64,000 nucleotides of DNA from Iphione sp. A-MEVVRFRX5 (lineage: Eukaryota). The translations under genes were made by a program, and so were the position numbers. Below are positions 9,770 through 50,329 of the stretch, one piece after another. The stretch is from contig OZ320321.1 of the NCBI GenBank assembly GCA_976226885.1, positions 20,894,001 through 20,958,000 on the forward strand, in the 5' to 3' direction. Under the pieces are notes generated by a model. The model was not told where the DNA came from. It made no database searches and was given only the letters and a program-made list of their open reading frames with translations. The stretch's first letter is position 1. Each line of letters begins with the position of its first letter.

Positions 9770-11554
9770 ATGTCTCACCAGGAGACGGAGTATGACGAGG
9801 AGGCGGCCATCCGGACGGCCATGGCCCTCAGCATCCTCACCGTGCAGGAGGACGACCGGCGCCGCAAGGAGAAGTGGGGCACCTTCGCGCCGCTCGCGCC
9901 CGACCTGAGCAGCGCGGCGGCGGTGGCTCAGGACGCGGCGGCGGCGACGACGACGACCGGGAAAAGCCTGACGGGCGCGCCGCCGCCCATGAGGCGGCCC
10001 GCCTCGGCCGGCACCTTGACCAGTCAGCAGAAACCTCAGTCGGGATCTGGCCAGACTCCCAGGTCGAGCCCACCCTTGGGTAGCATCGCGCGGCCGCGGC
10101 CTCAGTCGTCGACCAAGCCCGTCGTGGGCAAAGATGGCGGCGGCAGTGTGTTAGGGCTGAGCGGACCGCCCCCGCCCCTGCCGGTGGTGGGCCCGAACGC
10201 TCGTAGTTGTCAGCAGCAGCAGCAGATGGGTGGCAGCCGCGAGGATTTACAGTCTGCCCCGACCATCCTACTGCAGGGACCGCCGCGGTCGCCACGAGGT
10301 GCTCGGAGGAGCTCGGACATCGCCAACCCCAACATCGGCGGCGGCGGGGGCGGGAACGTGCGCAACAGCCTCAACGCGCACATGTTCGAGCCGCAGCCGT
10401 TGATCAGCTTGTCTCCCCCCGCCGCCAACACGCACGACTTTGACATAAGTAGTCTGGATCCACTTTGTTCAAAGTCTGATGACGCCTCTGATGGTGCCGT
10501 CGTGGCCGTCAGCCACCAGCCGCCCGTGCCGCCGCCGGCGGCCAGCAGAGGGATCACCATCCGCAACCCCATGTTCGAGCTGGGGGGTAGCTACCTGCCC
10601 ACTTACGGCATGCAGACTGGTCATACGGGGCAGGCCGTCCCGGCTCCCACTTCCTCGGCCAACTCCTCTACTACTACTACCCTGGGCGTCTTCGGAACAA
10701 CCACAAGTGCCTTGTCCTCATTGCATGCGCCCCCGTCGAAAGGCATTGCCGACGGCGGCGTCCGGAACAAAGGTGCCCTGCTCGCCCCCGGTGGTGTCGG
10801 CGTGGTCTCTGGCATGGCGGCGGAGGGTAAGGGCAAGACCCACCAGCCTAACTGTATCTCCGGCGTCACCCCCGCCATCCCGGGCTCCTCCTCGTCGTCC
10901 TCCTCCATGGCCACCCTCGACGGGGCCTCCTCCTCACAGTCGTCGACGCCGTCGCAGTCGTCGACGCCGTCGTACGCCTCCACGCCGCAGGTCTCCACGG
11001 CCTCCTCCACCTCCGGTGACCTCATGGACTTTGGGCTCTCCGATGACGAAGACCCGGCGCACGAGTTCCTCAGCCTGGAGATGTTCGACCCCTTGTACCG
11101 CCTCGACCCCGCCGGAGCGCGCGCCGTCGACTCCTTCGAAGCGCTGGCCGGGCGGCTGGCGGCCGACGAGCAGCGCCGACCGTCGCGCATGGGGGTGGTC
11201 GCCGTCGGACCTGCCATCCCGGAAAACGGCTCGCCCAAGTCGGTGGGGTCGCCGGTGCCCTCGCCGGCCCTGCCGACGACGGTCGACGCCTCGCCGCAAC
11301 AGTCGCTCGCCAGCGAGGAGGAGTCGACGATGACGACGACGAGGGAGGGCAGCACGGAGGACGGCGAGCTGCAGGACCCGTTCGAGATGACGGCCCTGAC
11401 GAGTGCCCTGGAGAGGAAGCGCGCCCAGCACGCCCAGGAGCAGGAGAGGCGGGACGCCTTGCTCAGACACAAGGAGGGCGGCGAGCGGGTCCAGACCCCG
11501 GCCGCCAAGCGGCAAGGCATCGTCCGACGGAACTCCCACCTCGAGAGAGGCAAG
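9770..11554 (+). CDS. PIK3C2A: PI3K-C2 coding exon 1: 595-aa low-complexity N-terminus
   Basis: ATG in good context (cagcaccATG), 601-aa ORF, donor AAG|gtgagc at 11555 phase 0. A strong polypyrimidine acceptor at 9683 implies an upstream non-coding exon. Confidence 0.92.
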
Positions 11555-13744
11555 GTGAGCGTGAACTTTGTATAATATACATGTATACACAGCTCTTACT
11601 TCACAGCAACTGTTGTGCTTCAGTAGTGATTGATCATTCATACATCCCCTTTCGTACAGCTCTCCGTCTCAGTGATCGGATTTAAAGCCGAGAGTGGTTT
11701 TCTGATCTGCACGAGATTCGAATATGATTCATGCCATTTGTCTGCATTACATTTTCAGCGCATCCAGAAACACACGGTAGTGTATCGGGCCTTCTGTAAA
11801 TGATGTATCAAGTATTAAAAAATAGTGAATATTTCTAGTTAACATCTGGCTTTGTTCCCCCCTTGAAAGATACGTGTACGTCTGTATTTAAGAAGTCGAC
11901 TCCGTGAAGTTATAATAGCATAAGATTAAGAAACCATGTAACAGCTGGTCTTCGAATTCCTTCTCTCTTTTCTTGACCAGTTTTAGAATTGAATGTAGCC
12001 CAAACTTTCATATTCTCAGCAATAAGTAACCTCTGAGGTTGATAAATGTTAGTGGTTCATGACCCAATCAGAAGAGGACATCTTGTCTTTATGGGCCATG
12101 GCTTCATTTTTGCAACAGTTTTATTGCAGCCAGGCGCAAAGTCCACTTGGTGCGTGTAAATATGTGCACTCATTTCTTCCTTGATGCATAGCAAACAAGC
12201 TGTCAAATTGTCTAGGTTGACCCAACTAGAACTAGCAAAGACTTCCCTATACAACAGTTGCATAGACAGAGAAATGTACATGAATGTAGGCTGACCATTT
12301 CATGTACACACTGTACAATGTACAAAGTGCAACCGATAATACACATATATATGTAGATATAAGAAGTATTATAACCTCCTCCCGGGGGGGCTATTATAAG
12401 ATTAGATGTATACTTAAGCAACCATCACTCAGCCTAAACTAAGGTACGGCCGTATGTAGGTTGATATGTTTTGTGGACATGTTGCCTCAGGGAGTCATCC
12501 GATCGAGTTATTCCACGGTCTGAGGATAAGGATTTCTTGTGGCACTGGAAAAGGAATAAATAATAATAATGATGAACGTACTATTACAGTTTCAGTTTTG
12601 ACACTGAGGTAATACTATAAACGCACAGGCAACATTGTTTTTGGAATATCATTGTCGCATTTCCGACTAGTAATCACGTAACTGTGCCTACGAGGTCAGC
12701 AGCGTAGACTGGTCAAGTTGTAATCACGTTTGTCATTAATGTGAAACAGTGTGGTTGACATCCCTAACGTTCCTGTCATAATTATCACCTTCAGCAAAAT
12801 TCATTGGAAAACTTATGTTTTTATTATGAAGGTCCTCACATGTGTGAATGTAATAGAATCCGTTGATAGACGGAGGGTAAAGGTAGCTTTTGAGGTCCTT
12901 AGGGCTGTTTTCCTTTCATGTGTGATGCATTTGTGTTGTATTTGCATTGCATTTTTTTAACCAGCAGCTGATGATGGAGGTGTTGCCATACCTGCGTTGT
13001 GTGATGTGTTGATGGGGGTTATGTTAGTATGCATTGTTCATTATTGTGTTTTAATTCAATGAAAACACACACAAATGCAGCAATAGTATGAAAAAGAGTT
13101 TTTTTTTAATTCTAGGTGTGTGTGCCTGTGGAAAACTCCACCTAAGTAGTATATAATTAGTATAAAAGCTGCATAATTGCCATAAATTTGGCTCACTTTC
13201 AACAAAAACTTTCACTTTCCACTTTCCACCCACACTGCACAATTTCGCTCCGTATATACCAGTTTTATTTACTTTACAAACACACACATACAGGAACACC
13301 TTGCAACATCATGCAAAACCTGCAAGTAAAAGTCATCCATCCCAATTTCACCAGGCATTACAACACAGTCCCAATGCATAGACACGTGAATGGAAACCTG
13401 CCCTCAGGTGATAGAGAGAAAGAAGGAGGGGTGATTGCATAGGTCTTTAGGTCCTTAGCCAGAGAGACAGACAGACAGACAGACAGGGACAGAGAGACAG
13501 AGGCAGAGACAGACAGAAAGCCAGAGACAGAGGGGGGGGGGCGTGAAAGTGGGTTTTTAGGTCTTTCGGTAGACCCATTACCTGATTACATGTATTAGCA
13601 CTTCGGTCAGTTCCTTTGTTGTGAGAAGGGATGTATAGTTTCCCAGCCTGATGCCGTGAAAGAATGCTACTCTCGTCTTAATTACTCACAACAGTGGAAC
13701 ACTTGTATATATATATTTTTTTGGTTCCTTGTATGTTTCGATAG

Positions 13745-33112: not shown

Positions 33113-33243
33113 AGTGTGTGACATTAATGACCTTCATGCGGCCTTAGAGGAGGTTACCCAGAGTGTGAAAGCTCTGATTGAGATGTACTGCCGGACCTTT
33201 CACACTGACTTCCGCTTCGAGTCTGCAGCCAATGTTGTCAGGG
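33113..33243 (+). CDS. PIK3C2A: PI3K-C2 exon 10 (VCDINDLHAALEEVTQSVKALIEMYCRTFHTDF)
   Basis: ttgccag| and |gtaagt, phase 2 to 1; LIEMYCRTFHTDF is a class II motif. Confidence 0.95.
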
Positions 33244-33875
33244 GTAAGTTTTTAAATCGTTCAGACGTGGCAAAAAGTGACTGTATCCTGCTAGTGCTAC
33301 CTTGACAGTGGGTTCTAAATAGTTCCATTCATAACTGCTACCCATTGTGATAGGTCATGTGATGTATATTCATAGTTACATCCCATGGTGACCCTTAGTG
33401 ATTGAGAATACTTCAATTTCTGCCATATATGTAATTATATGGTCAAGGGTTTTTGTTTTGTAGGATGTATATGTGTAACATTACATCCCTAGGTCAAGGT
33501 TTCGTCTGGTTAGACTTATCAGGCACTATTAATTAGCAGTGATCAAGGCATCAACTTTTGTTGATTTGTGAGGTCCCCAGCTCCATGCTGGTTGGATCTT
33601 TATCAAATATCACAATGGTTTGTACCATGAATTTCTGGTACAAAGAGATGGAATAGTGTGTGTTTTTTGTCTCCCACACAGTAATAAGAAAATTTTTGAA
33701 CGAGGCATTGGTGTGTGTGGATAGACAGATTACTCTCAACTCTGATAGACAGGAGCGTCTATCAAGTTAAATCAAAAAAAAAGGGGGGGGGGGTAAGTTT
33801 TTAGCTGGTAGTGTATACATGCACTACAGGTATGCCTCTGTCAATGAGGTTTATGTGTTTAAAAGAGATCACTGT

Positions 33876-33966
33876 GTTACACAGAGTGTGAAAGCTCTGA
33901 TTAAGATGTACTGCCGGACCTTTCACACCAACTTCCACTTTAAGTCTGCAGCCAGCGATGTCAGGG
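33876..33966 (+). pseudogene. Decayed partial duplicate of PI3K exon 10 (pseudo-exon)
   Basis: Hand alignment to 33153-33243 gives 10 mismatches in 91 nt and no indels; donor replaced by ggg-atac. Confidence 0.9.
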
Positions 33967-34994
33967 ATACATTTTAGCTGGTAGTGTGCCTCTGTTAATG
34001 AAGACGTTAAGTTCAAAGAGATCATTGAAAAGATGGTACCGGTATCATTTAGAATCATTTGAAGCATTTTGAATAGCTAAAATATAGTGAAACATTTCAT
34101 AACAATCTACCGTCAACCCTGAGGCCCCTACAATAAACTGTTGCAGTTGATCATTTTAGTTACACTCAGCCAGGCAGAAACAGTTCCATTTGATTGACCC
34201 TTGGGATGGGTCCTTAGACCTCACAGGTCACCTTCCTTGTAACATTGGGCACCATCACATTTGTTCTCAAATGGCTACTCTTTGTACTGTTAAGTGTAAC
34301 TCCATTTTAAAATGGCTTCGTTTCCGGGGGAGGGGGGGTCATTAAGATAGGCACACCTGTAGTCTGACAGTTCTTGGCAGCGAGTTGTGGCTAAAGGCCA
34401 TTTTGCTATGAATGTGTTACATGTAGTTGCATCAATTCCGCACCTGCTACAGTGTATTGCCGGGGGGGTTGAAACTGTAAACACGGCTCAGAGAGAGAAA
34501 TGATTTCCAATTGAAAGAAAATCCAATGATACGTGTTTCTGGACCGAAACTGTCCTTAAAGTCGGGTCTCCACAAAAACTTTGCTGCTATATATGATACC
34601 CTCTAATCCGTCTTGGCATTTGTACAGTTCAACTAAATATGATGCCCTCTAATCATCGTGAAGGTAGACCTTGACCCAAGCTAACTTATCCTAGGAAAGA
34701 GAGGCAGTTACTGTTTGATAGTGTTAATTGTTTGTGCATTTTTGCTGACAGCAGCCTTCGTCAAATCATTGTCTTGGCCATAAATAAGATGTCATCTAAG
34801 ACGCAGTTGAACATGTATAGTTGGTAGGAAGCCATCCTGCTGGTAGCTTTGGACCAAAAACATTAAGATATTTGATTTTTAATGAGATCGACACAGGATA
34901 TAGGAAATGTTTCTCATTGAATACTTGTATTTTTTCATGATATTCATTCATCATAAATCATTTAATCACTGGTGCCCCATCCTCACACATACAG

Positions 34995-38786: not shown

Positions 38787-39268
38787 TAAGGTTACAGTAT
38801 TCCTTATCCTGTCCCTGTCCTCTAGCTCCAGTCAGTTAACGCTCTGTCTTCATCAGGAGCATTTGTATGTGGGTTTTTATTTTCTACTTGAGGGGAATTG
38901 GTGTTAACTTCAGGATTCTCCCTGTTAACTTAATATATTGTAAGCCAAAACCAAACAATCCTCGAAACGAAAGCCTGTTAGAACTGGGGGTACTCCGGGA
39001 TTTTAGATTGTGGATCTTGATAATTCTGCATTTATAATGCGTGGTCAGCCTGCGGATAATCCACGCTAAATAATATTTGAAAGAAAAACCCTTGAAAATT
39101 TATTACAATTAATATTCACGGCCAGTGTGAGATAATAAATTTCTCAGCTGGGAATTCGAAAGGTGTCTAATTTCCTCCCCTGATATAATTTATGATTACT
39201 CCTGTGAGATTTCTACATGCCTTTTCCTTTACCCATCGCGTATTGACTCCCCCCCTCCCCCTCTACAG

Positions 39269-39443
39269 GCAGCTAAAGGAGGCAGCCGAAGACGTTCGCT
39301 ACCGGAAGCGGTACCAGTTGGTATTTGGAGCGTTACTCAGCGTCGTCGGTGCAGCCATGAGACGCGAGTTCAGCAAGCAGGAGGACCTGGTCAAGATGCT
39401 GGCAGCCATAGCAGAGAAGGTCAAGGCAGCAAAGGACAAGGAG
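39269..39443 (+). CDS. PIK3C2A: PI3K-C2 exon 19 (QLKEAAEDVRYRKRYQ...AEKVKAAKDKE)
   Basis: ctacag| and |gtaggt, phase 2 to 0. Confidence 0.96.
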
Positions 39444-40740
39444 GTAGGTCATAGCGTAGATCTTCCTCTAACAAGGGAAGAGTTTGGTTCGTGCAATGAG
39501 GCCTAAACAAAACAACAGTTGTGTTTCCAGTCACATGCTGGGGGAAAAAAGGGTTGGTATAAGTAGGTGTATTTATTTACTTTTTTTTATCTTACATACA
39601 AATGTATCGGTGAAGAAGCCAGACAGTACCTTCCAGTCTTGGTACTATCGCTTCTACTGCTTGAACCTTGATAGAATATACATGCATATCATGAAAGCTA
39701 ATGATCTTAGGACCGAAATGGTGTATTCGTATGCGTCGGTGGCATTATTCAGTCCCAAGATATGGGCAAAGCAATTCTGAAATAAAATGTTCCAACACAT
39801 CGAAGATCAGGGTCAGTCGGGTTACTGGAAACACATATTTTTTGCTTAGGCCTAATTTACATCGCCTTCAGCTCATACCATAGCCAGATCTGGCCATAAG
39901 CAACTCATAGCTTTGGACCAGAAAAGTCTACCATCTCTCTACCAGATTCCTCCATAGTTCTCAGGGGATGAACTCGTACTTCAAATTTTGGACGAGGAAT
40001 AGAAGTCATGTAGACCACAACAGTGCCAGATTACACATATACCCATGTGAGCAATCCCATGTGAATAATCTTATTTTGAGATATTTTATTTATCATGAAT
40101 TTATAAATATTACCTGGATGTTTGCATCATCATTGACGCGTTACCTCAGCGAATGACCCAAGTGGTACTTGTTTTCAGCAGCTGTTGCTTTGCATTTAAG
40201 GCCACTGTTATCAAAGCTTTTGATATTGTTTTTTTTATTGAATTACACTTGAATTCAGTGGAGATCAGGCCCTCTGCTAGATTTGATCTCCGCTATATGT
40301 AGGGATATAGATGAATTGCTGAGACATGGCTGACTTCTTCGGAGCCTGAGCTGGCGTTCTCCAGGAGAGTATACACTGTCTGGGCAATCTGCATTGGTCG
40401 GTGGCTTGGTCAGGGACTGAAGGAGGCTCCATCGGCCATAGTAGGGACCAGACAGCAATCCAACAAGTTCAGCAGGGTGGGAAGGGACTCCAATGGCCTC
40501 TGTATGTGGTAGAGAGGGCTCGAACAACTGCAGTGGGGTTGGAGGGGGGCCCCAATGAGCCAATCGCGAGGCTGATGATCACACCGTTACTACATGTATG
40601 TTTACCGTTTTTTGTGACAGTGTCACAAAATGAAGCATTTTGATTGGTCAATTCACATTATGATGTCACAATTAGTCAAAGTTACATCCACGATACCTAT
40701 TTATTTTTAACTGCTGGTGATTGGGTCATTACCACTGTAA

Positions 40741-41067: not shown

Positions 41068-41294
41068 TAAGGGACAGAGTGGGCTCCAGCAGCTGTGGCG
41101 GGGTTGGGATGGGGCAACTTATGGCCAGAGTATGGGATTGAGTGGGCTCCAGCAGAATGGTGGGGGTGGGACGGAGGAAAATTTCAGTAACTGCTTTAGG
41201 CCATCAACAAAAAGTTTCGGTGCACTGTGGAGTCTCAGTCTTCCGAGGGAAGAAGTGTGGCTGGGGTTCTGCACAAGTCACCGAGCGTGGCACC

Positions 41295-41652
41295 CTACCA
41301 TTTAAAAATAGACACACATATATGCGCGACCGTTAGCATGGGGATGACCATAGCGTATCGATGTAACTTCAGCCAGAGACCATCGATGATGGCTGCTGCT
41401 GCCCGGTAATGCTTGAAGTAGCTGCGGGAGGAGCTGCCACTTGTCACAGCAGCCGGGCGCGTTTCGTTACCCCCGTGCCTCGTCGCTTGGGCAGTGTTGG
41501 TCAGCCGGCAGCTCGGGCCGATGGTGCCCTCCGTCCTGCAGCTGTAAGGAGGGCGGCGGTACGTTCGGCAGGTCCGTCCGTAGTTGCGTAGCAACCGAGA
41601 CTGGCAGTCGGCGATGGACGGTGCCACGCAGAGGACGTACTGCGTGAAGGCC
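41295..41652 (-). CDS. Nested antisense gene, terminal coding exon (R-AFTQYVLCVAPSIADCQ...YAMVIPMLTVAHICVSIFKW*)
   Basis: Acceptor tttcccttgcag|G, phase 2 matching the previous donor; GC-rich coding-like codon usage; stop TAG at 41295; hydrophobic C-terminal tail. Confidence 0.85.
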
Positions 41653-41984
41653 CTGCAAGGGAAAGGCGTACGCAGTACCGTTTACTCAGTCGCACTAGGA
41701 GCCATGTCTCCAGTAGAGCTCCATCCTTTTGGCGTTTTCCTGCCAAAGTTTTTGGTCGTTGACCAACGGGGGCGGCCATACTGTACAGAGTTAGGGTCGG
41801 TTTCCTTAACTGCGTTGGTGTCCGTCAGGCTGTGTTTTGCTCCCTGTGCGTTAGTATACGTTTTACATGCATTTTCTCTTAACGCAGTGTTAACGGATAG
41901 GGGTGTCTATTGAGATTGCATTGACGTTGCGTGAGGTTGCACGAGGTTGCATGAAATCTATGATAGATTTATGATAGATGGAGG

Positions 41985-42212
41985 GAAAAGGATGAATATC
42001 ACTCTAAAAGCCATGAAAATGGCAGGGAAAATGATGAAAAAGGACGAATATGATGCTAAAAGGTGCAAAACTGGTGGAAAAATGATGAAAAAGGACTAAT
42101 ATGATTCTAAAAGCTGTGAATATGATAGGGAAAATGATGAAAAGGACGAATATGATTCTAAAAACTGTGAATATGATAGCGAAAATGATGAAAAAGGATG
42201 AATATGATTCTT
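41985..42212. repeat. ~50-bp degenerate purine-rich tandem, 4-5 copies, in the intron of the nested gene
   Basis: aaaatgatgaaaaaggacgaatatgattctaaa recurring. Confidence 0.85.
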
Positions 42213-42772
42213 AAATCAACAGAAATCATGGTCTTTCACCTGATTCAAAGGCCATCTGATGTATACTACTGTGCGTTTTGCGTCTGTGTGCGTTAAATTA
42301 TCGGTCAGTGACCATTAATGGTCAACGCATGGCAACGCACAGCAACGCACATGGAAACCTCACGCATACAATAGACACCCTCCATTGAAATCAGTGTGCT
42401 GGAAAAAAACGGATGGCAATGCACAAGGACACCAACGCATATAAGGAAACTGGCCCTTACGGCAACCCTTTTTCCCCACAACTTAAGTCGTGAAGAGTGC
42501 GAAGGTGTACGGACGATGGAGATCTTTTCGGACTTTCTTGACTTGAATTCATAGGAGAAATTTCGCATATATAGCAGGGCAGACAAGGGGTTTCAGAGTA
42601 GATTCATGGTATTAAGGGAGCGGAAGAAAGTGAATTTAACAGCGTGGAGACCCCCCCCCCACTCCCACACACACACTTACAAACACACACACGCATGCAC
42701 GCACGCACGCGCACGCACGCATGCACAGAGAAACGCAAGCATCTCTTTTTATTGTTGTTTTTTTGTACCCAC

Positions 42773-42960
42773 CTGCATATGTTATTTCCCTCTCCTGGTC
42801 GACTTTGAAGAACCACCGTATTCACATGCGCACGGTCTGCGTTACAACGGTGCAACGCAAAATTGATCGCGCCATCAGTACAGTGCGCTGGCACGAGGGG
42901 GCACCACAGGAGCAGCCAGGCCAGCGTCCCGGTAACCCCAGCACAGAGTAAAGTCAGCAT
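42773..42960 (-). CDS. Nested antisense gene, first coding exon: signal peptide plus Cys-rich start (MLTLLCAGVTGTLAWLLLWCPLVPAHCTDGAINFALHRCN...NNIC)
   Basis: ATG at 42960 (tcatcATG), hydrophobic N-terminus, donor TGCAG|gtgggt phase 2. An upstream tttcag acceptor (exon start 43004) implies a 5'UTR exon. Confidence 0.85.
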
Positions 42961-43415
42961 GATGATATAGCTTGGTTAGAGTCGTATGAAGTTTTCCTCC
43001 TCCTCTGAAATACCTGTCCGCCCTTCTTAAGTCGAAACACCCCTCAAGTCCTCATGCGGCCTACAGAACCTTGGCGTATGTAAAGAAGTCAGTGGTGACA
43101 ACTCGGTAGCACATTATACAGTCAGAAACATGTATCTGCCCCACGTCCTCACCATATGAAATGAATGATGATATAACTGCGATGTGATTGTCAAGCCGAG
43201 GATCTTTGAATCAGGTGTTTGTCATAGAAGTAGCCTATTTTTCCCCCTCAGTCTTTCGCAAGCACTTCGATGCATAGGTTAAATTGTCCACGTCGATCAA
43301 CGGATCGGATTTTTTTTCCGCTTGCTGGCTGAGATGCCAATTCCCTTGCCGTGTGCTGCCTTTTTGAGTCGTGATCGAACCTCTTCTGCTTCCTCCGGCT
43401 GGAGTCAGCGGCAGA

Positions 43416-43513
43416 GGCGCCACTGGCTCGCTGCGTACAATGGCGCCACTGGCTCACTGCCTACAATGACGCCACTGGCTCACTGCCTACAGTGGCGCCA
43501 CTGGCTCACTGCC
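43416..43513. repeat. 26-bp tandem repeat, about 3.7 copies
   Basis: ggcgccactggctcactgcctacaat units. Confidence 0.9.
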
Positions 43514-44178
43514 AGCCTCCTTTCCTACAATGAGAAATTCGACACCTTGGTTAGGGAGCAACCGCAGCAACACAATACCCACTGAAACTGCATCTCTTTG
43601 GAGGAACTCTCCCAGCTCATTAGGGGTTCCTCTTCACCGCAGAATACATGTATTTATTTTTTTTACCTTTACAGTCAAATTTAGGCGTATCTGGTCGGCA
43701 TACATGCAGCGCTGCGTAGGTTTCGTTCAGTGAAACTGTGAACAAACCAATCGTTGAAAGTTAGCCATCTCATAGCCATTCGCCACTACCGTTAGTTTGT
43801 GTCAACACTTAAGAATACGAACCAAGGCGAGGATGGTCAAGACTTTGTATATGCTTCGTGGGAAAATATAAAGATATATCCAGTCAGACGTCCTCTTATG
43901 AACACATTTACATTGCCAAATGCAGATAATTTGAATAAGAACAGCCAAAATGCCCATAGTTAATATATGTGACAGGATGCCTTCCATCGGGACAGGATAA
44001 TTCGGGAAACGCCCCGCTGTGGACATGGTTGGCAAAGGCGTCAAAGGGTGTTTATTTTGCCTACGTACATGTCTATCAGACCTCTAAAGTACCTAGAACT
44101 GTAAACAGGGAGCTGTGAGGATACGTTTTCTCGCATCATAGGCCTCTCCCTTTGAAGGGAGGGCCACACAGCTACATA

Positions 44179-45828: not shown

Positions 45829-46475
45829 TGTGTGATGTCTGAGCCAGTGTCAGGTCTGTATCAGGCAGCCACATACCTCTGCAGAGTGACAGGTTCTGTG
45901 ATGTCTGAGCTACTGCTTGAGGGGCCCTGTGATGTCGGAGCTGGTGTCAAGTCTTAGTCAGGCAGCCACATACTGCTCCTGAGTGAGGGGCTCAGTGATG
46001 TCTGAGCTGGTGTTAGGTCCCAGTCAGGCAGCCATGTACCTCTACTGAGTGAGGGGCCCTGTGATGTCTGAGCCATTATTAGGTCTCAGTCAGGCAGCCA
46101 AGTACCTCAACTGAATGAGGCATCCTCTGATGTCTGAGCCTGTATCAGGTCTCAGTCAGGCAGCCATGTACCTCAACTGAGTGAGGGACCCTCTGATGTC
46201 TGAGCCAGTGTCAGGACTCAGTCGAGCAGCCAAGCACAGCTCCTGAGTGAGGGGCTCTGTGATGTCTGAGCCAATGTTTTAGGTCTTAGGCAGCCACGTA
46301 CCACTACTGAGTGAGAGGGTCTGTGATGTCTGAGCCAGTGTTAGGTCTCAGTCAGGCAGCCACATACCTCAACTGAATGAGGGGCCCTCTGATGTCTGAG
46401 CTGGCATTAGGTCTCAGTCAGGCAGCCATGTACCTTTACTGACTGAGGGCTCCGTGGTGTCTGATCTAGCATCAG
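45829..46475. repeat. 66-bp minisatellite, about 10 copies
   Basis: gatgtctgag recurs at 45931, 45997, 46063, 46129, 46195, 46261, 46325 and 46391, with partial units at the ends. Confidence 0.95.
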
Positions 46476-50224: not shown

Positions 50225-50329
50225 GCGGTGTTGCAGAGAGAACTGGAGAACATGTTTGACTTTCTGCAGCGAGAGAGTATTCACCTACCGATCAACCCGA
50301 GTATGGAGATCATCGGCGTGGATGCCAAG
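50225..50329 (+). CDS. PIK3C2A: PI3K-C2 exon 20 (AVLQRELENMFDFLQRESIHLPINPSMEIIGVDAK)
   Basis: ctacag| and |gtaaga, phase 0 to 0. Confidence 0.95.

What the first reader, a model, noticed from the sequence alone, without database searches (positions are those of the whole stretch)
41295..43004. Nested antisense gene for a small secreted, probably GPI-anchored, neuritin/RGM-N-like protein inside the PI3K-C2 intron
Seen: two minus-strand exons with canonical splice sites and matching phase 2 join into a 181-aa ORF. It has a hydrophobic signal peptide, Cys at 27/39/62/71/79/91/101/111, a Ser/Thr/Ala-rich stalk with an N-E-T sequon, and a ~20-aa hydrophobic tail ending at the stop. Recalled knowledge: the RGMa N-domain has spacing C-x22-C-x8-C-x7-C-x21-C with CN and Y.LC, which C39-C62-C71-C79-C101 reproduces (HRCN, CRAFTQYVLC). 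Neuritin/CPG15 shares C-x8-C-x7-C followed by DCQ (here ADCQ) and is a small GPI-anchored protein. No vWD-like domain is present. Inference: an invertebrate neuritin-like or RGM-N-only surface protein, possibly a BMP-binding or neurite/synapse modulator, hidden antisense in a housekeeping kinase gene.
Basis: partly seen in the sequence, partly recalled or inferred. Interest (0 to 1): 0.88.

Follow-up and report, generated by a model that had tools for sequence, protein, structure and literature searches.

The report
Conserved small gene nested in PI3K-C2
A small two-exon gene on the opposite strand inside an intron of a class II PI3-kinase gene is very probably real, because a related animal keeps its second exon in the same intron under purifying selection, but only its cysteine spacing supports calling it a neuritin or RGM relative.

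Summary
Minus-strand exons 42960-42773 and 41652-41295 join in phase 2 (CAG|GTGGGT donor, pyrimidine-rich acceptor). They give 181 aa with a signal peptide, eight ectodomain Cys, an N-E-T sequon and a hydrophobic C-terminus.

The gene lies antisense in an ~11 kb intron of a class II PI3K. I walked along a relative's PI3K-C2 gene on an ENA contig. Exon 2 is there, in the same intron, on the same strand and with the acceptor at the same codon. tblastn gives 49% identity over 51 aa, E 1.7e-10; the ungapped 38-aa core is 55% identical. Intron DNA does not align. dN/dS is about 0.17, and 12 of 21 identical residues use different codons. Given exon 2, an upstream exon like exon 1 arises by chance in 0.25-2.5% of simulations. 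Exon 1 was not found in the relative. No RNA run was listed.

Family: C39-C101 has exactly the spacing x22-x8-x7-x21 of RGM-N, checked against PDB RGMB. C91 and C111, the two extra Cys, are absent from the relative. Every other test was negative or uninformative:
- Pfam (RGM_N and NRN1 controls positive)
- PDB sequence and profile searches
- phmmer against 1.84 billion proteins
- ESM Atlas
- AlphaFold (pLDDT 43-48)

The GPI anchor is untested; the relative has a transmembrane-like segment plus a 29-aa tail.

The parts
42773..42960 (-). Exon 1 coding part: ATG, signal peptide (aa 1-25, 42960-42886) and the first part of the Cys-rich domain (C27, C39, C62). It ends in TGC AG|GT, phase 2.
   Evidence: Given a real exon 2, only 0.25% (donor >=8/9) to 2.5% (>=7/9) of simulated 3-kb upstream sequences hold such an exon. 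It was not found in the relative.
41653..42772 (-). Intron of the nested gene (1120 nt, GT..AG). It holds a 51-nt minisatellite at 41986-42215.
41295..41652 (-). Exon 2 coding part (aa 63-181 plus TAG): C71, C79, C91, C101, C111, then stalk and tail.
   Evidence: GC3 periodicity P about 5e-4. Ortholog in the relative at L008 16939-16564 (-).
41538..41651 (-). Conserved core, aa 64-101: 21 of 38 residues are identical in the relative, including C71, C79 and C101.
   Evidence: tblastn E 1.7e-10, alignment A1, dN/dS 0.17 with pS 0.72
41463..41471 (-). N-E-T glycosylation sequon (aa 124-126) in the Ser/Thr/Ala-rich stalk. The relative has N-V-T in its stalk.
41298..41360 (-). C-terminal hydrophobic segment (aa 161-181) that ends at the stop. 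It could be a GPI signal or a tail-less membrane anchor.
   Evidence: Hydropathy. The relative has a 20-aa hydrophobic segment followed by 29 more residues. No GPI predictor was available.
41200..43800 (.). Block of high CpG observed/expected (0.7-1.0) over the nested gene and about 800 nt upstream. The flanking intron is at 0.36-0.5.
   Evidence: In the relative only the exon 2 window is CpG-rich.
43113..43118 (-). TATAAT, about 155 nt upstream of the ATG: a possible core promoter element (weak evidence).
   Evidence: Read
40700..40705 (-). First minus-strand AATAAA after the stop, about 590 nt downstream: a possible polyadenylation signal (weak evidence).
39246..39410 (+). Host class II PI3K exon just upstream of the host intron (approximate limits).
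   Evidence: 94% identical to the relative at L006 10139-10333.
50231..50300 (+). Next host exon, at the start of the kinase region (approximate limits). It closes the ~11 kb host intron.
   Evidence: Read. Kinase domain hit further on.

Best explanation
This is a real, evolutionarily conserved protein-coding gene of two coding exons, nested antisense in an intron of a class II PI3-kinase gene.

Its product is a 181-aa precursor with four parts:
- a cleavable signal peptide (cut after V-P-A, aa 25)
- a basic disulfide-rich ectodomain of about 86 aa
- a short glycosylated Ser/Thr-rich stalk
- a C-terminal hydrophobic segment that holds it on the cell surface (GPI signal or tail-less membrane anchor in this species)

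Shown here: the gene model, the host context, and the conservation of exon 2 and the selection on it.

Inferred: secretion, disulfide bonding, surface anchoring, and a role as a small cell-surface binding module. Its family is unassigned by every sequence, profile and fold test that could be run. The only link to RGM-N is an identical spacing of five cysteines.
For: Gene model.

Host gene and intron.

Ortholog: I walked the relative's PI3K-C2 gene through loci L001-L009. The host exons there are about 60-97% identical.
- Exon 2 lies in the same intron, antisense, with the acceptor at the same codon and phase.
- tblastn gives 49% identity over 51 aa, E 1.7e-10; the ungapped 38-aa core is 55% identical.
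- blastn finds no similarity between the introns.
- dN/dS is 0.17 with pS 0.72, and 12 of 21 identical residues use different codons.

Coding signal: GC3 periodicity in the proposed frame, P about 5e-4.

Exon 1: a chance equivalent appears in 0.25-2.5% of simulations given exon 2. A whole-model chance equivalent appears on 0-2.5% of strands.

Other: CpG-rich block over the gene. The exons are not repeats, and no tRNA or Rfam match lies in the intron.
Against: - No RNA run was listed, so the splice junction is unobserved.
- Exon 1 has no identified counterpart in 13 kb upstream of the relative's exon 2.
- After aa 101 the two proteins cannot be aligned with confidence, and they end differently.
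- No homolog turned up in 1.84 billion cluster representatives or in the 5.8-billion word-indexed set.
- The composition is Arg/Ala-rich and poor in Asp/Glu/Lys, as in translated GC-rich DNA.
- The Atlas recognition score is low at 1028.
- Only one relative could be examined.
Confidence: 0.8

Rival explanations
1. It is a true but very divergent member of the RGM-N / neuritin kind. On this reading it is a stand-alone disulfide-stapled three-helix bundle on a membrane anchor that binds BMP/GDF-type ligands or modulates neurite and synapse growth. This refines the best explanation rather than excluding it.
For: - C39-x22-C62-x8-C71-x7-C79-x21-C101 equals C2-C6 of RGMB. RGMA aligns without gaps, and RGMC does from C3 on.
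- The chance of that pattern among 8 random Cys in 90 residues is 3.6e-5 for a single family pattern.
- The two extra Cys (C91, C111) are absent from the relative, which keeps C-x7-C-x21-C.
- Non-Cys similarity to RGMB in that register is slightly above shuffles, P 0.023.
- RGM-ND is a three-helix bundle with three disulfides that binds BMP2 and GDF5 (PMC7354924).
- The overall layout resembles neuritin: signal peptide, about 90-aa Cys domain, hydrophobic end.
Against: - The 88-aa spliced domain hits no Pfam family at E<=10, while RGM_N gives 92 bits and NRN1 84 bits on their controls.
- PDB phmmer and a two-sequence profile find no RGM at E<=10.
- phmmer on 1.84 billion proteins and the Atlas are blank.
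- AlphaFold reaches pLDDT 43-48 with no helical bundle.
- The first gap is 11 residues against 4 in RGM.
- The stretch that would be helix 3 is basic and has conserved prolines.
- In-register similarity over exon 2 is inconsistent between the two species.
- 'DCQ' is 'GCP' in the relative.
- The match was picked after the fact from many possible families.
- The exon 1 cysteines are not confirmed in a second species.
Confidence: 0.3
2. Exon 2 is a real conserved coding exon, but the proposed exon 1 is wrong. The true transcript would use other 5' exons, so the signal peptide and the first three cysteines are not part of the protein.
For: Exon 1 has no detectable ortholog in 13 kb upstream in the relative. 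Exon 1 shows no codon-position periodicity. No RNA evidence was obtainable.
Against: - It is the only signal-peptide-like, phase-compatible exon with a strong donor in the 3 kb upstream.
- Such an exon arises by chance in 0.25-2.5% of simulations, and one with at least 3 Cys in 0 of 400.
- It supplies three ectodomain Cys, giving an even total of eight here, or six without the C91/C111 pair.
- Signal peptides and short exons diverge fast, and the relative's introns are much larger.
Confidence: 0.12
3. There is no gene: the ORF is a chance product of GC-rich intronic DNA, or the conserved piece is a non-coding element of the host gene.
For: The composition is like translated GC-rich DNA, with long ORFs in several frames over 41.3-41.9 kb. 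There are no database homologs. A scan of some 250,000 windows will turn up some chance ORFs of this type (lenient thresholds).
Against: - Conservation is at the amino-acid level, with near-saturated synonymous change.
- The frame is open for 124 codons in the relative, and the acceptor is conserved.
- Surrounding intron DNA is not alignable.
- The GC3 phase matches the ORF.
Confidence: 0.06

Closest known systems
RGM N-terminal domain (Pfam RGM_N, PF06535; RGMA/RGMB/hemojuvelin; PDB 4uhz, 4uhy, 4ui1)
   Same: The spacing of five cysteines is identical (x22, x8, x7, x21). There is an aromatic residue at C3+6 and a hydrophobic residue at C3+3. The protein is extracellular and membrane-anchored.
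   Different: - There is no profile or sequence match.
- The first Cys gap is 11 residues, not 4.
- There is no RGD/RGN motif and no HSAV..GI.DLM-type helix 3.
- There is no RGM_C / partial vWD domain with the GDPH site; the protein is only 181 aa.
- This species has two extra Cys.
- The fold is unverified.
Neuritin / CPG15 (Pfam NRN1, PF15056)
   Same: The architecture is alike: signal peptide, one Cys domain of about 90 aa, and a hydrophobic C-terminus. Both have the C-x8-C-x7-C core. This species also shares the 'DCQ' that follows it.
   Different: - There is no match to NRN1.
- The flanking gaps differ: 22 and 21 here. In neuritin they are 24 (recalled from memory only, not checked by any tool) and 27 (memory-typed bait, which matched NRN1 ungapped at 84 bits).
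- 'DCQ' is not conserved in the relative.
- There is an extra stalk of about 35 aa.
- Neuritin has no solved structure in the PDB copy searched.
- Its presence outside vertebrates was not established here.
Nested antisense genes in introns of large animal genes
   Same: It is a compact gene on the opposite strand inside a long intron, and the arrangement is kept between two species.
   Different: Nothing unusual in kind. No functional link to the host PI3K-C2 gene is indicated.

Membership tests
RGM (N-terminal domain) | Cysteine framework C-x4-C-x22-C-x8-C-x7-C-x21-C (three disulfides) | tested here: inconclusive
   Four of five gaps are identical (x22, x8, x7, x21) against PDB RGMB; the first gap is 11, not 4. 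C4-C6 are conserved in the relative. C1-C3 are seen in this genome only.
RGM (N-terminal domain) | Match to the family profile RGM_N (PF06535) | tested here: not met
   The 88-aa spliced domain and both exon peptides hit 0 families at E<=10. The RGMB control scores 92 bits.
RGM (N-terminal domain) | Three-helix bundle fold | tested here: inconclusive
   AlphaFold reached pLDDT 47.6 (single sequence) and 43.2 (two sequences). The models are unusable, so no fold search was run.
RGM (whole protein) | C-terminal RGM_C / partial vWD domain with the autocleavage site | tested here: not met
   The ORF ends at aa 181 with a stalk and a hydrophobic tail, and there is no Pfam hit.
RGM (N-terminal domain) | Binding of BMP/GDF ligands | not testable with these tools
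   This needs a binding assay. Residues of RGM helix 3 are not recognisably kept.
Neuritin (NRN1) | Match to the family profile NRN1 (PF15056) | tested here: not met
   0 families at E<=10. The neuritin control scores 84 bits.
Neuritin (NRN1) | Cysteine spacing including x24 and x27 around the x8-x7 core | tested here: not met
   The x8-x7 core is shared but the flanking gaps are 22 and 21. The neuritin x8, x7 and x27 gaps come from a memory-typed bait that matched NRN1 without gaps. The x24 gap is recalled from memory only.
Neuritin (NRN1) | GPI anchorage | not testable with these tools
   Here the hydrophobic segment ends at the stop. The relative has a hydrophobic segment plus a 29-aa tail. 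No GPI predictor was available.
Nested antisense protein-coding gene | Coding exons on the opposite strand within one host intron, conserved and under purifying selection | tested here: met

The most novel reading that the evidence does not exclude
The gene encodes a stand-alone RGM-N-type module on a membrane anchor in a mollusc-type invertebrate. It would be a form between RGM and neuritin, kept in the same PI3K-C2 intron across species. That would show the RGM N-domain exists as an independent small surface protein outside vertebrates, and it would give a handle on the origin of neuritin and on BMP co-receptor evolution.
Probability: 0.3. Interest if true: 0.6.

Novelty: new member of a known kind. 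Interest (0 to 1): 0.42.

Why it matters
The result turns a paper gene model into a gene supported by cross-species selection. The protein collections searched did not hold it.

If the cysteine framework reflects descent, it would be the first stand-alone RGM-N-like surface protein seen in this scan. It would then be a candidate BMP/GDF-binding or neuritin-like factor in invertebrates.

If it does not, this is one more lineage-restricted small cysteine-rich surface protein nested in a large gene. That is useful for annotation but not surprising.

Tried and rejected
**Searches that found nothing useful**
- Pfam on each exon, on the 88-aa spliced domain and on the relative: nothing.
- Word-indexed protein search with exon 2 and with the two-species alignment: nothing.
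- phmmer against 1.84 billion representatives: one hit, P0001, a translated tandem repeat matched in 9 stretches. I rejected it as spurious.
- PDB by sequence and by profile: only chance NDUFA7 hits at E 0.3.
- ESM Atlas: no usable or coherent hit.
- AlphaFold twice: low confidence, so no fold search was run.
- Exact-protein look-ups of the two genomic ORFs: not on record.
- JGI metagenome scan with the alignment: nothing.
- Earlier notes of this scan, by place and by sequence: nothing.

**Readings considered and dropped**
- Transposon or repeat origin: no terminal repeats, the exons are single-copy in the window, and there is no tRNA or Rfam match.
- Exon 1 in the relative: two signal-like ORFs (L009 3277-3365 and 12134-12213) have weak donors or no similarity and sit in repeat-rich DNA. 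I did not accept them.
- In-register BLOSUM tests against RGMB and neuritin: weak and inconsistent. RGMB against neuritin itself scores at chance, so the test has little power.

Only the 88-aa domain was.

Full report
**1. Observation**

On the minus strand an ATG at 42960 opens exon 1 (42960-42773, 188 nt). It ends in TGC AG followed by GTGGGT, which matches the donor consensus at 8 of 9 positions. After a 1120-nt intron, the acceptor cctttcccttgcag precedes exon 2 (41652-41295, 358 nt, TAG stop). The joined frame is 546 nt, giving 181 aa, with a phase-2 junction.

The product has four parts:
- A hydrophobic N-terminus with a V-P-A cleavage motif.
- Cys at 27, 39, 62, 71, 79, 91, 101 and 111.
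- A Ser/Thr/Ala-rich stretch with an N-E-T sequon.
- A hydrophobic last 20 residues.

**2. Context**

Plus-strand stretches around the site hit four Pfam families:
- PI3K_C2 at 35.7 and 36.2 kb.
- PI3Ka at 37.7, 38.3 and 38.7 kb.
- PI3_PI4_kinase at 53.3 kb.
- PX at 56.7 kb.

This order identifies a class II PI3K. The candidate lies between the host exon at about 39.25-39.41 kb and the next at about 50.2 kb. It is therefore antisense in an intron of about 11 kb.

The two exons are not repeated in the window. The candidate's own intron holds a 51-nt minisatellite. No terminal repeats, tRNA or Rfam match suggest a mobile element.

**3. Is it more than chance?**

- In block-wise Markov simulations of the window, 0 of 120 strands gave a matching model under strict splice thresholds, and 3 of 120 did under lenient ones. 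A matching model was a two-exon ORF of at least 150 aa with a signal-like start, a hydrophobic end and at least 6 Cys. The thresholds were chosen after seeing the candidate. A scan of a quarter of a million windows would still yield some such ORFs, so this alone does not prove a gene.
- Exon 2 has a three-base periodicity: GC is 0.50, 0.57 and 0.72 at codon positions 1-3. This was exceeded by about 5 in 10,000 simulated open frames of the same composition. The third-position composition equals that of the host's exons, whose GC3 is 0.66.
- CpG observed/expected is 0.7-1.0 from 41.2 to 43.8 kb, against 0.36-0.5 on both sides.

**4. A relative decides the matter**

The 601-aa GC-rich ORF at 9770-11575 is the large first coding exon of the host gene. 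It has a 43% identical homolog, P0002, on an 890-kb contig of an ENA assembly.

The host exons are found in order at about 60-97% identity. The exon equal to window 39.2-39.4 kb lies at L006 10139-10333, at 94% identity.

Its downstream intron is longer than 37 kb and shows no DNA similarity to the window's intron. About 25.5 kb into it, on the strand antisense to the host, L008 16941-16789 matches residues 63-109 of the candidate. tblastn gives 49% identity over 51 aa, E 1.7e-10, in a 20-kb target.

The match starts right after a pyrimidine tract and AG, at the same codon and phase as in the window. The frame stays open for 124 codons.

In the ungapped 38-codon core:
- 21 residues are identical, including C71, C79 and C101.
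- 12 of those 21 use different codons.
- pS is 0.72 and pN is 0.32, so dN/dS is about 0.17.

This is the pattern of a protein-coding exon under purifying selection. It is not that of a conserved non-coding element or a chance frame.

Beyond residue 101 the two proteins are not reliably alignable. Both continue with a polar stalk carrying an N-x-T sequon and then a hydrophobic segment of about 20 residues.

**5. Exon 1**

I could not find its counterpart in the 13 kb upstream of the relative's exon 2. I tried tblastn, cysteine patterns and a search for signal-like, phase-compatible exons. Two weak candidates sit in repeat-rich DNA, and I do not accept them.

Within the window, however, exon 1 is the only such exon in the 3 kb upstream of the acceptor. 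When that 3 kb is replaced by simulated sequence, an equivalent exon appears in 0.25% of trials (donor at least 8/9) to 2.5% (at least 7/9). One with three or more Cys appeared in none of 400.

I take the model as probably right, about 0.8. The rival that exon 2 is used with other 5' exons gets about 0.12.

**6. Family**

RGMA aligns to it without gaps, and hemojuvelin does from the third Cys on. This fixes the framework C-x4-C-x22-C-x8-C-x7-C-x21-C.

C39 to C101 of the candidate reproduce x22, x8, x7 and x21 exactly. For eight Cys placed at random in 90 residues, the chance of that pattern is 3.6e-5 for a single family pattern.

The two Cys that had to be skipped, C91 and C111, are both absent in the relative, which keeps C-x7-C-x21-C. 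This removes part of the cherry-picking objection and suggests they form an extra, lineage-specific disulfide (inference).

Against this, every test beyond cysteine spacing failed or was uninformative:
- The whole 88-aa spliced domain, both exon peptides and the relative's peptide hit no Pfam family at E<=10. RGM_N (70 positions) scores 92 bits on RGMB, and NRN1 scores 84 bits on a neuritin fragment.
- PDB searches by sequence and by two-species profile list no RGM at E<=10.
- phmmer over 1.84 billion representatives gives only a spurious repeat protein.
- The Atlas gives nothing coherent.
- AlphaFold reaches only pLDDT 43-48.

In the cysteine-anchored register, non-Cys similarity to RGMB is marginal: P 0.023 over C2-C6. 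Over exon 2 the results are inconsistent between the two species:

| Comparison | This species | Relative |
|---|---|---|
| RGMB | P 0.19 | P 0.04 |
| Neuritin | P 0.009 | P 0.34 |

RGMB against neuritin itself scores at chance in this test, so the test has little power.

Other points against membership:
- The stretch that would be RGM helix 3 is basic and carries conserved prolines.
- 'ADCQ' reads 'AGCP' in the relative.
- The first gap is 11 residues rather than 4.
- There is no RGM_C domain.

I therefore do not file the protein as a member of either family. I give about 0.3 to a real but very remote relationship.

**7. Anchor**

In this species the hydrophobic segment runs to the stop, preceded by small residues (A146-A149) and a spacer of about 11 residues. 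That fits a GPI signal (established knowledge of GPI signals; inference). No predictor was available.

In the relative the hydrophobic segment is followed by 29 mostly polar residues, which looks like a type I membrane anchor. What is conserved is a C-terminal membrane-anchoring segment, not demonstrably a GPI signal.

**8. Mechanism**

The most likely mechanism is as follows. The precursor enters the secretory pathway. The signal peptide is removed. The basic ectodomain folds with three or four disulfides, and the stalk is glycosylated. The protein is then displayed on the cell surface as a small binding module. All of these steps are inferred.

A BMP/GDF-binding or neuritin-like role is possible only if the RGM-N relationship is real. 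PMC7354924 describes RGM-ND as a three-helix bundle with three disulfides that binds GDF5 and BMP2.

**9. Limits**

- None of the public RNA runs was listed for this stretch, so no reads could be laid.
- Only one relative was reachable, and its taxon is not given.
- The full 181-aa spliced protein has no reference and was not entered in any tool.

**10. Verdict**

A real nested gene is well supported. The family assignment is unproven and rests on cysteine spacing alone. This is a new member of a known kind, of moderate interest.

Noticed in passing
window 9770-11575 (+): A 601-aa ORF with GC 0.67-0.73 and CpG o/e about 1.0-1.2 has no Pfam hit. It is the large first coding exon of the host PI3K-C2 gene, 43% identical to P0002 at the head of the relative's gene. 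Long overlapping ORFs on both strands there come from the GC richness.
   Followed up: partly
window 33153-33252 and 33876-33975 (+): A 100-nt piece of a host exon is duplicated 723 nt downstream at 87% identity. The first copy ends in GG|GTAAGT. The second has lost the donor (GGGATACA), so it looks like a decayed pseudo-exon. Both map to a single place in the relative.
   Followed up: partly
window 45833-46449: A tandem array of 7-8 copies of a 66-nt unit lies in the same host intron.
   Followed up: no
window 43416-43513: A 26-nt tandem repeat (3.8 copies, 93% matches) holds GGCGCC. It sits about 450 nt upstream of the nested gene's ATG, inside the CpG-rich block. It might belong to the gene's promoter region.
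   Followed up: no
L006-L009 (relative's orthologous intron): The host intron is longer than 37 kb in the relative, against about 11 kb here. The extra DNA is full of recurring short ORFs and a CpG-rich hairpin repeat (L009 3040-3180).
   Followed up: partly
window 41604-41657 (-): The acceptor ...TGCAG|G also reads as Cys-Arg in the unspliced frame. The C-x8-C spacing therefore appears with or without splicing, as a by-product of TGCAG at both splice sites.
   Followed up: yes
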